DNA from: Saccharolobus solfataricus P2
GTDB taxonomy: Archaea > Thermoproteota > Thermoprotei_A > Sulfolobales > Sulfolobaceae
Assembly: GCF_000007005.1 (NCBI RefSeq)
Contig: NC_002754.1
Length of the DNA stretch: 64,000 nt
Direction: 5' to 3' (one strand)
Positions 14,956-54,273 of the stretch are shown here, piece by piece. The first letter of the stretch is position 1; each line of letters starts with the position of its first letter. The position numbers were made by a program, and so were the translations under genes. The notes under the pieces are model-generated. The model saw only the letters and a list, made by a program, of their open reading frames with translations. It was not told where the DNA came from and did not search any database.

Positions 14956-15196
14956 CCTCTCGGCTAATTTAGTTTTGTTCTTCTTTACCTTTTTGAATAT
15001 AAAATTTATATTGATTGAAAGGTCTTTTTACCTATATTAGACTAGTTTAATGTAATTTAGTAATATTACGAAGGTAACAGAAAAACCATAATATACTAGC
15101 TTTTACTAACGAGAGTTAAGATTAACTTAAGTAATGTTGAGAGGTCGTTTACGAGAGGAAAAAAATAAATACCTTGCGTTATCATTATTAAACAGT

Positions 15197-15276
<80 letters not shown>

Positions 15277-15344
15277 ATACTTTTTTATTTGCTGTCGTTA
15301 TTTATTTCTCCAAGACTTAATTTATTAGAAGTTTATAATTCTCG

Positions 15345-15398
15345 TTATGATGAGCCTCGTAGTTAATGAAAGGTGAATGAAGGTCTTGAGTGCTGAAT
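15345..15398 (+). ncRNA. Box C/D guide sRNA; predicted targets tRNA-Val(UAC) U34 and tRNA-Leu(CAA) C34
   Basis: C ATGATGA 15347-53; guide GCCTCGTAGTTA; D' ATGA 15366-69; C' GTGAATGA 15373-80; guide AGGTCTTGAGTG; D CTGA 15393-96. Intergenic. Confidence 0.85.
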
Positions 15399-15451
15399 TT
15401 TAATTGTTAGTAGATAAGTTTAAGTAGTATAAGTTTAGAGGTAATTATGTA

Positions 15452-16036
15452 ATGCTGTTATACGTCGTAATAAAGACTCCTAATTTGCTTCAGTTTCCAG
15501 AATTTATTCCTAAAAAGGTTACAGTTAACATTCTGGATATAAGGGTTGATGGGGAGAAAGGTAAGCTACTTCTCGAGATACGTGGAGACGAAACCAGCGC
15601 TAAGCAAGTTTGTGAAGAACCTATTAAAGTTTCAAAGTATAAATTTATCTGTACAAATTATATTTCAAGTGAGTTACTTAAGATTTTATCGCAATATACT
15701 ATAATGAATGGTGCTTTAACAGATGATGGAATTTTTTGGACTTTAATACTAAACGGTTATACAGAGCTTAGGGAATTACTTAACTCGCTAATAGACATTA
15801 CAAAAGAAGTTAGAGTTTTAAAAGTTGTGAAAGCTGAAAAGAAAGATGCAATAACTGCAAGGCAGGAGCAAATACTAAGGATTGCATTAGAAGCTGGATT
15901 TTTCGACTATCCTAGAAGAATAGGATTAAAAGATCTGGCTAAAAAGTTAAACATCAGTCCATCTAGTCTAAGTGAAATTATAAGAAGAGCTGAAAAGAAC
16001 GTAATTACAGCTTATTTTGAAGAGAGGGAACTATGA
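15452..16036 (+). CDS. Transcription regulator with C-terminal HTH_10 (Bat-type) domain
   Basis: ITARQEQILRIALEAGFFDYPRRIGLKDLAKKLNISPSSLSEIIRRAE. Confidence 0.88.
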   Translation: MLLYVVIKTPNLLQFPEFIPKKVTVNILDIRVDGEKGKLLLEIRGDETSAKQVCEEPIKVSKYKFICTNYISSELLKILSQYTIMNGALTDDGIFWTLILNGYTELRELLNSLIDITKEVRVLKVVKAEKKDAITARQEQILRIALEAGFFDYPRRIGLKDLAKKLNISPSSLSEIIRRAEKNVITAYFEEREL

Positions 16037-54220: not shown

Positions 54221-54273
54221 GTGTGATGATAAGGGACCACATGGAGTGGTGAAGATAACTTACCCGTCTGAAT
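54221..54273 (+). ncRNA. Box C/D guide sRNA; D guide complementary to LSU rRNA CGGGUAAGUU
   Basis: C GTGATGA 54223-29; C' TGAAGA 54250-55; guide TAACTTACCCGT 54256-67; D CTGA 54268-71; D' degenerate. Intergenic. Confidence 0.85.

What the first reader, a model, noticed from the sequence alone, without database searches (positions are those of the whole stretch)
15345..15398. Dual box C/D sRNA whose two guides both point at tRNA wobble bases
Seen: C/D'/C'/D architecture. The D guide pairs with CUCAAGAC, and the N+5 base (G15388) falls on C34 of a Leu(CAA) anticodon loop. The D' guide GCCTCGTA pairs with UACGAGGC, and N+5 (A15361) falls on U34 of a Val(UAC) loop. Established: the N+5 rule; archaeal C/D RNAs can methylate tRNA position 34; bacteria and eukaryotes use protein enzymes (TrmL, Trm7) for Nm34. 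Target tRNAs are not in the window, so their loops are inferred. The RNA may already be catalogued.
Basis: partly seen in the sequence, partly recalled or inferred. Interest (0 to 1): 0.72.

Follow-up and report, generated by a model that had tools for sequence, protein, structure and literature searches.

The report
Box C/D guide RNA targeting tRNAs
This is a real, expressed small guide RNA of the archaeon Saccharolobus solfataricus whose two 12-base guides line up on the first anticodon base of tRNAs, a known archaeal way of methylating tRNA; it is a new, previously unclassified member of a known kind.

Summary
The window is Saccharolobus (Sulfolobus) solfataricus P2, 372001-436000. The C/D'/C'/D layout at 15345-15398 is present, with two 12-nt spacers. 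Several lines show it is a genuine box C/D sRNA:
- It is conserved in three related species.
- S. acidocaldarius Sac-sR108 carries the same D guide.
- An unclassified ncRNA was mapped at window 15343-15387.

I recovered the real S. solfataricus tRNA-Val(UAC). The D' guide forms 8 Watson-Crick pairs plus one G.U, with N+5 on U34. That meets the 9-bp threshold only if the wobble pair counts, and the match is lost in a more distant Saccharolobus MAG and in S. acidocaldarius.

AGGUCUUGAG, the first ten bases of the D guide, is invariant in seven sRNAs from four genera. It fits tRNA-Leu(CAA) C34, a target already predicted in Pyrococcus. I could not retrieve that tRNA from this genome.

Unexpectedly, both guides also pair with one real pre-tRNA, Ser(CGA). 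The D guide covers C34 and the 5' splice site; the D' guide covers the 3' end of the intron.

Random guides place N+5 on a wobble base in about 0.1% of trials.

The parts
15343..15398 (+). box C/D sRNA (mapped 5' end 15343; 3' end inferred just before or within the T run)
   Evidence: ncRNA 8 is listed at P2 387343-387387 (+), which is window 15343-15387. Rfam C/D models align over 15343/15344-15397/15399. Conserved in three other Sulfolobaceae.
15347..15353 (+). C box AUGAUGA
   Evidence: Read directly. Invariant in all homologues.
15354..15365 (+). D' guide GCCUCGUAGUUA (12 nt; N+5 = A15361)
   Evidence: Pairs with the real S. solfataricus tRNA-Val(UAC) at U33 (G.U) and U34-C41 (8 Watson-Crick pairs). 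It also pairs with intron nucleotides 52-60 of pre-tRNA-Ser(CGA). Variants in relatives: GCCTCGTAGTTT, ACCTCGTAGTTG, TGCCTGTAGTTA.
15366..15369 (+). D' box AUGA (degenerate CUGA)
   Evidence: Aligned to the CUGA columns of the Rfam C/D models. NeqsR12 of N. equitans has the same D' variant.
15373..15380 (+). C' box GUGAAUGA (RUGAUGA with one inserted A)
   Evidence: Rfam alignments place an insertion here. It is GTGAATTT in S. tengchongensis and ATGAAGA in the MAG.
15381..15392 (+). D guide AGGUCUUGAGUG (12 nt; N+5 = G15388)
   Evidence: AGGTCTTGAG is invariant in Sso, E5-1-F, S. tengchongensis, the Saccharolobus MAG, Sac-sR108, IHOsR37 and NeqsR12. It pairs with real tRNA-Ser(CGA) 31-41 with C34 at N+5. 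Its perfect complement is CUCAAGACCU.
15393..15396 (+). D box CUGA
   Evidence: Read directly. Invariant in homologues.
15398..15401 (+). T run (TTTT), likely archaeal oligo-T termination signal (inferred)
   Evidence: Sequence. The role is inferred from general knowledge of archaeal termination and was not tested.
15317..15327 (+). A/T-rich TATA-like element TTAATTTATTA, about 16-26 nt upstream of the mapped 5' end (inferred promoter)
   Evidence: Sequence. A/T-rich blocks sit at a similar distance in E5-1-F and S. tengchongensis. The bacterial-type scan is not applicable.
15196..15273 (+). tRNA-Gly(GCC) upstream neighbour, followed by a T6 run at 15282-15287
   Evidence: ARAGORN and Rfam. 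In the Saccharolobus MAG the sRNA C box starts 6-7 nt after this tRNA, which suggests a tRNA-sRNA dicistron there.

Best explanation
Window 15343-15398 (+) encodes a genuine archaeal box C/D sRNA of Saccharolobus solfataricus. It is the counterpart of S. acidocaldarius Sac-sR108, with which it shares the D guide. By inference from the family, the RNA assembles with L7Ae, Nop5 and fibrillarin on its C/D and C'/D' motifs, and each 12-nt spacer selects the nucleotide paired to its fifth base upstream of D or D' for 2'-O-methylation. The D guide (AGGUCUUGAGUG) is the conserved, primary guide. Its most likely target is C34 of tRNA-Leu(CAA), and it may cross-react with C34 of tRNA-Ser(CGA) through one internal U.G pair. 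The D' guide (GCCUCGUAGUUA) most likely directs Um34 formation in tRNA-Val(UAC) in the S. solfataricus/islandicus/tengchongensis lineage, through a short duplex of 8 Watson-Crick pairs plus 1 G.U. Shown here: the boxes and spacers, conservation, a transcript, and complementarity to the real tRNA-Val(UAC) and tRNA-Ser(CGA). Inferred: RNP assembly, actual methylation, and the tRNA-Leu(CAA) target.
For: Architecture. Organism and coordinates. Expression: ncRNA 8 is listed at window 15343-15387. The S. acidocaldarius homologue Sac-sR108 was found by RNA-seq and is listed with a count of 2152. Conservation: boxes and D guide are kept in E5-1-F, S. tengchongensis and a Saccharolobus MAG while flanks diverge. 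In the MAG the sRNA directly follows tRNA-Gly. The first ten bases of the D guide are identical in Sac-sR108, IHOsR37 and NeqsR12, always in the same N+5 register. The NeqsR12 version, AGGUCUUGAGCC, is the 12/12 complement of GGCUCAAGACCU. Precedent: Pyrococcus sRNAs target N34 of tRNA-Leu(CAA), Leu(UAA), Met and Trp. Pyrobaculum sRNAs target C34 of Val and U34 of Gln and Thr. The real S. solfataricus tRNA-Val(UAC) is ...GCUGCC-CUUACGA-GGCAG... with no intron. The pairing pattern is '...uWWWWWWWW' with N+5 on U34. Chance of such a wobble hit on 11 real tRNAs is 7.5e-4 for D' and 1.6e-3 for D. An intron-containing crenarchaeal tRNA-Leu(CAA) (L235) reads GGCUCAAG|intron|ACCC, giving 9 Watson-Crick pairs with the D guide. 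The RNA has no stable self-structure (z = +1.5), as expected for an open guide RNA.
Against: The tRNA-Leu(CAA) of this genome was not retrieved, so the D target is inferred. The discoverers of Sac-sR108 assigned its D guide to 23S C1114, and the S. solfataricus rRNAs could not be checked. In the D'-Val duplex N+1 to N+3 are unpaired and N+4 is a G.U pair. From memory, published structures allow only about 10 bp (N+2 to N+11), which would leave about 8 effective pairs. The D' guide is not conserved beyond close relatives: the MAG has TGCCTGTAGTTA and Sac-sR108 has GCTCGGACGTAC, and neither fits a CUUACGAGGC loop. In Pyrobaculum about 80% of tRNA-targeting sRNAs have one guide with no target. 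D' pairs about equally well with the pre-tRNA-Ser(CGA) intron (-15.3 against -15.6 kcal/mol). All Rfam scores are below the gathering thresholds. No modification data for S. solfataricus tRNA-Val(UAC) or tRNA-Leu(CAA) were found.
Confidence: 0.6

Rival explanations
1. Exon-intron clamp on pre-tRNA-Ser(CGA). The two guides act together on one precursor. The D guide pairs with G31-U41 of the pre-tRNA, covering the anticodon loop, the 5' splice site and the first intron bases, with C34 at N+5. The D' guide pairs with intron nucleotides 52-60, just before the 3' splice site. Together they capture both strands of the central 4-bp helix of the bulge-helix-bulge splice motif (C32-G35 paired with C56-G59). 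This would expose C34 for methylation before splicing, or chaperone the precursor.
For: Real S. solfataricus pre-tRNA-Ser(CGA) (L284 c6218-6327). The D pattern is '.uWWWuWWWWWW' (11 contiguous pairs, 2 G.U). The D' pattern is 'W.WWWuWWWWW.' (9 contiguous pairs, 1 G.U), 20 nt downstream. A random guide hits this pre-tRNA at that quality in 0.6-0.8% of trials. Within the N+2 to N+11 window the D'-intron duplex has 9 pairs, against 8 for Val. The Sso and Sac D' guides both begin GC(C)UCG, mimicking tRNA-Ser(CGA) 31-35. The CUGCGAGGG intron motif recurs in a distant crenarchaeal tRNA-Ser(CGA) (L205). Duplex energies are comparable to the alternatives. Paired targets within 100 nt are the norm for rRNA dual guides.
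Against: All seven homologues have U, not C, opposite position 35, so the D guide is tuned to CAA rather than CGA. Methylating an intron nucleotide has no obvious use. The Val and Ser-intron targets share CGAGG in the same register, so one of the two may be a by-product of the other. This finding is post hoc, from a scan of only 11 tRNAs. No intron sequences were available from the species with divergent D' guides, so compensatory change could not be tested.
Confidence: 0.2
2. Single-guide sRNA. Only the D guide is functional, and the D' spacer is an orphan or decaying guide whose matches to tRNA-Val(UAC) and the Ser intron are fortuitous.
For: D' varies among relatives while D is invariant. 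The internal boxes are degenerate (AUGA, GUGAAUGA, and GTGAATTT in S. tengchongensis). About 80% of tRNA-targeting sRNAs in Pyrobaculum have one guide without a target. The Sac-sR108 D' guide has no rRNA prediction. The D'-Val duplex is short.
Against: A chance wobble hit of this quality has probability about 7.5e-4 on 11 tRNAs, which I extrapolate to roughly 3e-3 for a full set of about 46. The 12-nt spacer length is kept in all four Saccharolobus/Sulfolobus versions.
Confidence: 0.3
3. The D guide's real target is ribosomal RNA: 23S C1114 in the numbering of Dennis et al., as predicted for Sac-sR108. The tRNA matches would then be incidental.
For: The target-prediction sheet of PMC4644070 lists Sac sR108 with D target 23S C1114 and D' NP.
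Against: The same guide core in I. hospitalis has no rRNA prediction. In N. equitans it is assigned to a different site, 23S C2567. No common rRNA site therefore explains its conservation. The authors state that tRNA targets were not catalogued. S. solfataricus rRNA could not be examined here.
Confidence: 0.15
4. Not a functional RNA: a chance arrangement of box-like words in an AT-rich intergenic spacer.
For: The C...D word pattern alone is only about 3-fold enriched in the window. Rfam scores are below threshold.
Against: There is a transcript at the locus. Boxes and D guide are conserved across species with diverged flanks. An expressed homologue exists in S. acidocaldarius. Both spacers are exactly 12 nt.
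Confidence: 0.03

Closest known systems
Sac-sR108, box C/D sRNA of Sulfolobus acidocaldarius (Dennis et al. 2015, PMC4644070, Additional file 1)
   Same: Same C box and the same D guide (AGGTCTTGAGTA against AGGTCTTGAGTG) with an identical N+5 register. Similar length (about 53 nt). Expressed in RNA-seq.
   Different: The D' guide is unrelated in most positions (GCTCGGACGTAC). The genomic context differs: it is not next to the HTH_10 gene in S. acidocaldarius SUSAZ. Its published target assignment is 23S C1114, not a tRNA.
IHOsR37 (Ignicoccus hospitalis) and NeqsR12 (Nanoarchaeum equitans)
   Same: They carry the same 10-nt guide core AGGUCUUGAG with the same N+5 nucleotide. NeqsR12 also uses an AUGA D' box.
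   Different: In NeqsR12 the core sits in the D' spacer rather than the D spacer. The second guides are unrelated. The rRNA predictions are absent or inconsistent.
[quoted passage not shown] 2001, as summarised in PMC7994747 and PMC7668247)
   Same: Same mechanism and, for the D guide, the same predicted target: C34 of tRNA-Leu(CAA).
   Different: Different phylum. I could not compare sequences because the primary paper is not held. There each wobble target is described as having its own sRNA, whereas here two wobble targets share one sRNA.
Pyrobaculum sR45 (C34 of tRNA-Val), sR27 (U34 Gln), sR46 (U34 Thr), sR26 (C34 Trp) (Lui et al. 2018, PMC6009581)
   Same: C/D guides aimed at the wobble base, including a tRNA-Val. 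Each wobble guide has a single tRNA target.
   Different: The Pyrobaculum Val target is C34, not U34 of Val(UAC). [quoted passage not shown]
Intron-encoded C/D guide of pre-tRNA-Trp (Haloferax, Pyrococcus) and other C/D guidance acting on intron-containing pre-tRNAs
   Same: C/D-guided Nm34 formation on intron-containing precursors. This is the conceptual precedent for the pre-tRNA-Ser(CGA) exon-intron pairing seen here.
   Different: The present sRNA is a free-standing gene, not an intron. Its D' guide would pair with an intron rather than with position 39.

Membership tests
Archaeal box C/D sRNA (2'-O-methylation guide) | Terminal C box (RUGAUGA) and D box (CUGA) | tested here: met
   AUGAUGA at 15347-53 and CUGA at 15393-96. 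Both align to the box columns of seven Rfam C/D models.
Archaeal box C/D sRNA (2'-O-methylation guide) | Internal D' and C' boxes with short linker | tested here: met
   AUGA at 15366-69, a 3-nt linker, and GUGAAUGA at 15373-80. Both are degenerate but in the expected register.
Archaeal box C/D sRNA (2'-O-methylation guide) | Two guide spacers of about 12 nt and total length about 50-60 nt | tested here: met
   Both spacers are exactly 12 nt, and the C-to-D span is 50 nt.
Archaeal box C/D sRNA (2'-O-methylation guide) | Stable small transcript | tested here: met
   ncRNA 8 is listed at P2 387343-387387 (+) in the S. solfataricus RNA table of PMC4500138. The listed end, 15387, is short of the D box, so the exact 3' end is not established.
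Archaeal box C/D sRNA (2'-O-methylation guide) | Guide complementarity of at least about 9 bp to a stable RNA with the N+5 nucleotide paired | tested here: met
   D' against real tRNA-Val(UAC): 8 Watson-Crick pairs plus 1 G.U. D against real tRNA-Ser(CGA): 9 Watson-Crick pairs plus 2 G.U. Chance level is about 1e-3. The D'-Val case is marginal.
Archaeal box C/D sRNA (2'-O-methylation guide) | Binding of L7Ae, Nop5 and fibrillarin, and methylation activity | not testable with these tools
   Needs RIP/CLIP and in vitro reconstitution.
Archaeal box C/D sRNA (2'-O-methylation guide) | Score above a curated Rfam gathering threshold | tested here: not met
   The best score is sR5, 20.2 bits against 40. 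These Rfam families are individual Pyrococcus sRNAs defined by their guides, so failure excludes membership of those particular families, not of the class.
Sac-sR108 orthologue group | Shared D guide in the same register next to the D box | tested here: met
   AGGTCTTGAGT(G/A)-CTGA in both.
Sac-sR108 orthologue group | Shared D' guide or shared genomic context | tested here: not met
   The D' guides differ. There is no GGTCTTGAG match in the syntenic S. acidocaldarius SUSAZ locus L162.
tRNA wobble (N34) guide sRNAs | N+5 falls on position 34 of a real tRNA of the same genome | tested here: met
   U34 of tRNA-Val(UAC) for D' and C34 of tRNA-Ser(CGA) for D, both from S. solfataricus 98/2 and CP050869.
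tRNA wobble (N34) guide sRNAs | N+5 on C34 of this genome's tRNA-Leu(CAA) | not tested
   The gene was not retrieved.
tRNA wobble (N34) guide sRNAs | Nm34 present in the target tRNAs and dependent on the sRNA | not testable with these tools
   No modification map of S. solfataricus tRNA-Val(UAC), Leu(CAA) or Ser(CGA) was found. The S. acidocaldarius data cover other tRNAs.

The most novel reading that the evidence does not exclude
One 54-nt sRNA serves three wobble positions and doubles as a pre-tRNA chaperone. The D guide methylates C34 of both tRNA-Leu(CAA) and tRNA-Ser(CGA). The D' guide methylates U34 of tRNA-Val(UAC). On pre-tRNA-Ser(CGA) the two guides simultaneously capture the two strands of the bulge-helix-bulge central helix (exon 31-41 and intron 52-60), which would couple wobble methylation to the timing of splicing.
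Probability: 0.15. Interest if true: 0.65.

Novelty: new member of a known kind. Interest (0 to 1): 0.4.

Why it matters
RNA-guided 2'-O-methylation of the tRNA wobble base is established in principle for archaea. For Sulfolobales, however, the source I read lists tRNA targets from the public guide catalogue only for S. acidocaldarius: tRNA-Gln U34 and G18, and tRNA-Gly C50. The same source reports that several observed ribose methylations in S. acidocaldarius tRNAs still lack a guide or enzyme. Classifying the anonymous ncRNA 8 as a C/D guide, and re-reading Sac-sR108 as a likely tRNA-Leu(CAA) guide, gives concrete and cheap-to-test assignments for Nm34 in three tRNAs. The exon-intron pairing on pre-tRNA-Ser(CGA), if real, would bear on the order of methylation and splicing. 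It would also bear on whether dual guides act as folding chaperones on tRNAs as proposed for rRNA.

Tried and rejected
1. Rfam at gathering thresholds found only the two tRNAs. The sub-threshold C/D hits were used only to check box placement.
2. A full-text search for the guide strings found only unrelated papers.
3. The primary papers were not held: d'Orval 2001, Kaine 1983, Marck & Grosjean 2003 and Wurtzel 2010.
4. The Wolff 2020 supplement is a poorly machine-read PDF and gave no usable tRNA-Leu(CAA) row.
5. Four viral-contig scans for the tRNAs gave only phage tRNAs, chance matches or nothing.
7. I first followed synteny from Acidianus hospitalis (the TFE locus). That led to tRNA-Val(GAC) in S. 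solfataricus, not Val(UAC). The gap downstream holds an RNase P RNA-like region, not a tRNA.
8. The correct locus came from aCPSF1/FttA synteny.
9. Attempts to reach tRNA-Leu(CAA) failed. One look-up was wasted on a mis-set reading frame. Extending the tRNA-rich region added no new tRNA. The idea of using a multi-copy IS transposase to sample the genome was dropped because ten window ORFs showed no transposase.
10. The bacterial promoter and terminator scan is not applicable to archaea.
11. Duplex energies do not discriminate between the candidate targets.

Full report
**Identity of the window**

- The 194-aa HTH_10 protein encoded just downstream of the finding is found, residue for residue, in Saccharolobus solfataricus P1 (LT549890.1), 98/2 and CP050869.
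- Published P2 coordinates for SSO0446, SSO0447 and SSO0448 match the window ORFs with a constant offset of 372000. The window is therefore NC_002754 372001-436000.
- The finding lies in the 178-nt spacer between tRNA-Gly(GCC) (15196-15273) and SSO0447 (15452-16036).

**The observation**

- The sequence reads C box AUGAUGA (15347-53), a 12-nt spacer GCCUCGUAGUUA, D' AUGA (15366-69), linker AAG, C' GUGAAUGA (15373-80), a 12-nt spacer AGGUCUUGAGUG, and D CUGA (15393-96), followed by AUUUU.
- Seven Rfam archaeal C/D models align over the whole element with exactly these box assignments. All score below threshold (best 20.2 bits against 40). This is expected for families built around other guides.
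- The RNA has no stable fold of its own (z = +1.5), which is normal for an open guide RNA.
- The bare C...D word pattern is only weakly enriched: 4 matches against 1.33 expected. The boxes alone would not prove anything.

**Why it is real**

- The element is identical in three S. solfataricus strains.
- It is present upstream of the HTH_10 orthologue in Sulfolobus sp. E5-1-F, S. tengchongensis and a Saccharolobus MAG, with C, D and the D guide intact while the surrounding spacer has diverged or been replaced. It is absent from the same locus in Sulfolobus sp. A20.
- In the MAG the C box begins 6-7 nt after tRNA-Gly. This arrangement would allow a tRNA-sRNA dicistron, a known archaeal layout.
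- In S. solfataricus a T6 run follows the tRNA, and an A/T-rich TATA-like block lies about 16-26 nt upstream of the RNA. Independent transcription is therefore likely, but this is inferred.
- The S. solfataricus RNA table in PMC4500138 uses ncRNA identifiers from the Wurtzel 2010 transcriptome. It lists ncRNA 8 at 387343-387387 (+), which is window 15343-15387. No class or homologue is assigned. The RNA is therefore catalogued as a transcript but was not recognised there as a C/D sRNA.
- The supplement of Dennis et al. 2015 contains S. acidocaldarius Sac-sR108 (AATGATGA GCTCGGACGTAC ... GTGAGGA AGGTCTTGAGTA CTGA; count 2152). It has the same D guide.

**The D guide**

- AGGUCUUGAG is invariant in the four Saccharolobus/Sulfolobus versions, in Sac-sR108, in IHOsR37 of Ignicoccus and in NeqsR12 of Nanoarchaeum, always with the same nucleotide at N+5.
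- The Nanoarchaeum version is the perfect 12-mer complement of GGCUCAAGACCU, which reads as a Leu(CAA)-type anticodon arm (positions 30-41).
- rRNA predictions for these three published sRNAs disagree: 23S C1114, none, and 23S C2567. The authors state that tRNA targets were not compiled. A shared rRNA site is therefore an unlikely reason for the conservation.
- C/D guidance of C34 in tRNA-Leu(CAA) is already predicted for Pyrococcus.
- I could not obtain the S. solfataricus tRNA-Leu(CAA) gene.
- The nearest evidence is a crenarchaeal metagenomic tRNA-Leu(CAA) (L235) that reads GGCUCAAG|intron|ACCC.
- S. solfataricus tRNA-Leu(CAG) and tRNA-Ser(CGA) share the stem GUAGG/CCUAC, which would supply the U41 that the guide's 5' A demands.
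- Against real S. solfataricus tRNAs, the D guide's best hit is tRNA-Ser(CGA): GGCUCGAGACCU, C34 at N+5, 11 contiguous pairs of which two are G.U.
- Every homologue has U rather than C opposite position 35. I therefore read Ser(CGA) as a possible secondary substrate and Leu(CAA) as the selected one.

**The D' guide**

Finding the real tRNA-Val(UAC) took several steps.

2. A scan that left positions 37-43 free showed that crenarchaeal tRNA-Val(UAC) has GA, AC or AA at positions 37-38 in comparable numbers.
3. Synteny from Acidianus led first to tRNA-Val(GAC) in S. solfataricus. Its loop is CUGACAC and it does not match the guide.
4. aCPSF1/FttA is adjacent to a tRNA-Val in five Sulfolobales contigs: Val(UAC) in four of them and Val(GAC) in the fifth.
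5. Fetching the S. solfataricus aCPSF1 locus gave the gene: GGGCCCGTCGTCTAGCCTGGTTAGGACGCTGCCCTTACGAGGCAGAGGTCCTGGGTTCAAATCCCAGCGGGCCCA, with no intron.

The result:

- The D' guide pairs with U34-C41 (8 Watson-Crick pairs) and with U33 through a G.U pair. N+1 to N+3 face C30-C32 and are unpaired.
- The relatives E5-1-F and S. tengchongensis keep 9 and 8 of these pairs. The MAG guide (TGCCTGTAGTTA) and the Sac-sR108 guide do not fit this loop.

**Statistics**

- I used 11 real S. solfataricus tRNAs or pre-tRNAs and required at least 9 contiguous pairs, at least 8 of them Watson-Crick, with a Watson-Crick pair at N+5.
- A composition-matched random guide lands N+5 on a wobble base in 0.075% of trials for D' and 0.16% for D.
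- It hits anywhere in the set in 3-5% of trials.
- Both guides of one sRNA pointing at wobble bases is therefore very unlikely to be accidental, even allowing for post hoc selection.

**An unexpected second reading**

- The same scan showed that D' also pairs with the intron of pre-tRNA-Ser(CGA): UUACUGCGAGGG, 9 contiguous pairs with one G.U. This site is 20 nt downstream of the D-guide site on the same precursor.
- By my reading of the sequence, C32-G35 pair with C56-G59 to form the central helix of the bulge-helix-bulge splice motif. The two guides would each take one strand of that helix.
- A random guide matches this precursor at that quality in 0.6-0.8% of trials.
- Duplex energies are indistinguishable: D' with Val is -15.6 and D' with the Ser intron is -15.3 kcal/mol at 37 C.
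- The Val and Ser-intron sites share CGAGG in the same register, so one could be a by-product of the other. I keep this as a rival and as the most novel reading, not as the main explanation.

**Comparison with what is known**

- Mechanistically this is an ordinary archaeal C/D sRNA.
- Wobble-base guides are known or predicted in Pyrococcus (Leu-CAA, Leu-UAA, Met, Trp), Haloferax (Trp), Pyrobaculum (Trp, Gln, Val-C34, Thr) and S. acidocaldarius (Gln U34).
- New here: the classification of ncRNA 8; the tRNA reading of the Sac-sR108 guide family; a candidate guide for U34 of tRNA-Val(UAC); and two wobble guides sharing one sRNA. In Pyrobaculum most tRNA-targeting sRNAs use a single guide.

**Verdict**

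This is a new member of a known kind, of moderate interest. The missing pieces are the tRNA-Leu(CAA) and rRNA sequences of this genome and any modification data.

Noticed in passing
window 54222-54273 (+): A second likely box C/D sRNA: (A)TGATGA TAAGGGACCACA TGGA GTG GTGAAGA TAACTTACCCGT CTGA, with two 12-nt spacers. From memory, its D-guide complement resembles the conserved 23S rRNA segment CGGGUAAGUUCC. This was not tested.
   Followed up: no
L284 c6218-6327 (S. solfataricus 98/2; also L285, L286): Pre-tRNA-Ser(CGA) has a 24-nt intron (ACCUUUCCAGCGUUACUGCGAGGG) whose first four bases repeat the first four bases of exon 2 (ACCU). The splice position is therefore ambiguous from sequence alone. 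Both guides of the sRNA pair with this precursor.
   Followed up: partly
L284 2451-2552: S. solfataricus tRNA-Leu(UAA) has a 15-nt intron that begins ACCCCC. The precursor reads CUUAAGACCC, which matches the D guide better than the mature CUUAAGAUCC does (-15.1 against -12.5 kcal/mol), but with a G.U pair at the N+5 position.
   Followed up: partly
L004 (SRR1798093 contig) against window 15190-15273: In one sequencing-run assembly the tRNA upstream of the sRNA is tRNA-Gly(UCC) with different upstream genes (MacB/FtsX). The junction lies inside the tRNA gene, which suggests recombination between tRNA-Gly genes or a mis-assembly.
   Followed up: no
L155 11955-12224 and L284 12110-12366: Both S. 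solfataricus tRNA-Val genes, GAC and UAC, are overlapped on the opposite strand by SSV1-type integrase fragments. The two loci share 89% identity over 228 bp, which looks like remnants of integrated elements. Across Sulfolobales the two conserved tRNA-Val slots (after DUF2122 and after aCPSF1) hold UAC or GAC in either order.
   Followed up: partly
L155 14487-14795: A structured, G+C-rich non-coding stretch between Sec61-beta and an AsnC-family gene looks like the RNase P RNA. The P2 table lists RNase P RNA at 224710-225039 (-), which falls within this locus's range in the P1 record (219953-240489).
   Followed up: no
L235 c8213-8323; L247 3031-3132; L284 c13511-13601: ARAGORN mislabels intron-containing archaeal tRNAs. 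A tRNA-Leu(CAA) and a tRNA-Leu(CAG) are both called Ser(cga). A tRNA-Glu(CUC) with a non-canonical intron is called Ser(cga) in default mode.
   Followed up: yes
window 15418-15441 and homologous loci: The block TTAGTAGATAAGTTTAAGTAGTAT upstream of the HTH_10 gene is conserved even in Sulfolobus sp. A20, which lacks the sRNA. It is probably the promoter or operator of SSO0447.
   Followed up: no
L158 1-1858 (S. tengchongensis): In S. tengchongensis the sRNA is preceded by integrase fragments (Phage_integr_3, SSV1_ORF_D-335) instead of TFB and tRNA-Gly. The sRNA has therefore survived a rearrangement of its upstream flank.
   Followed up: no
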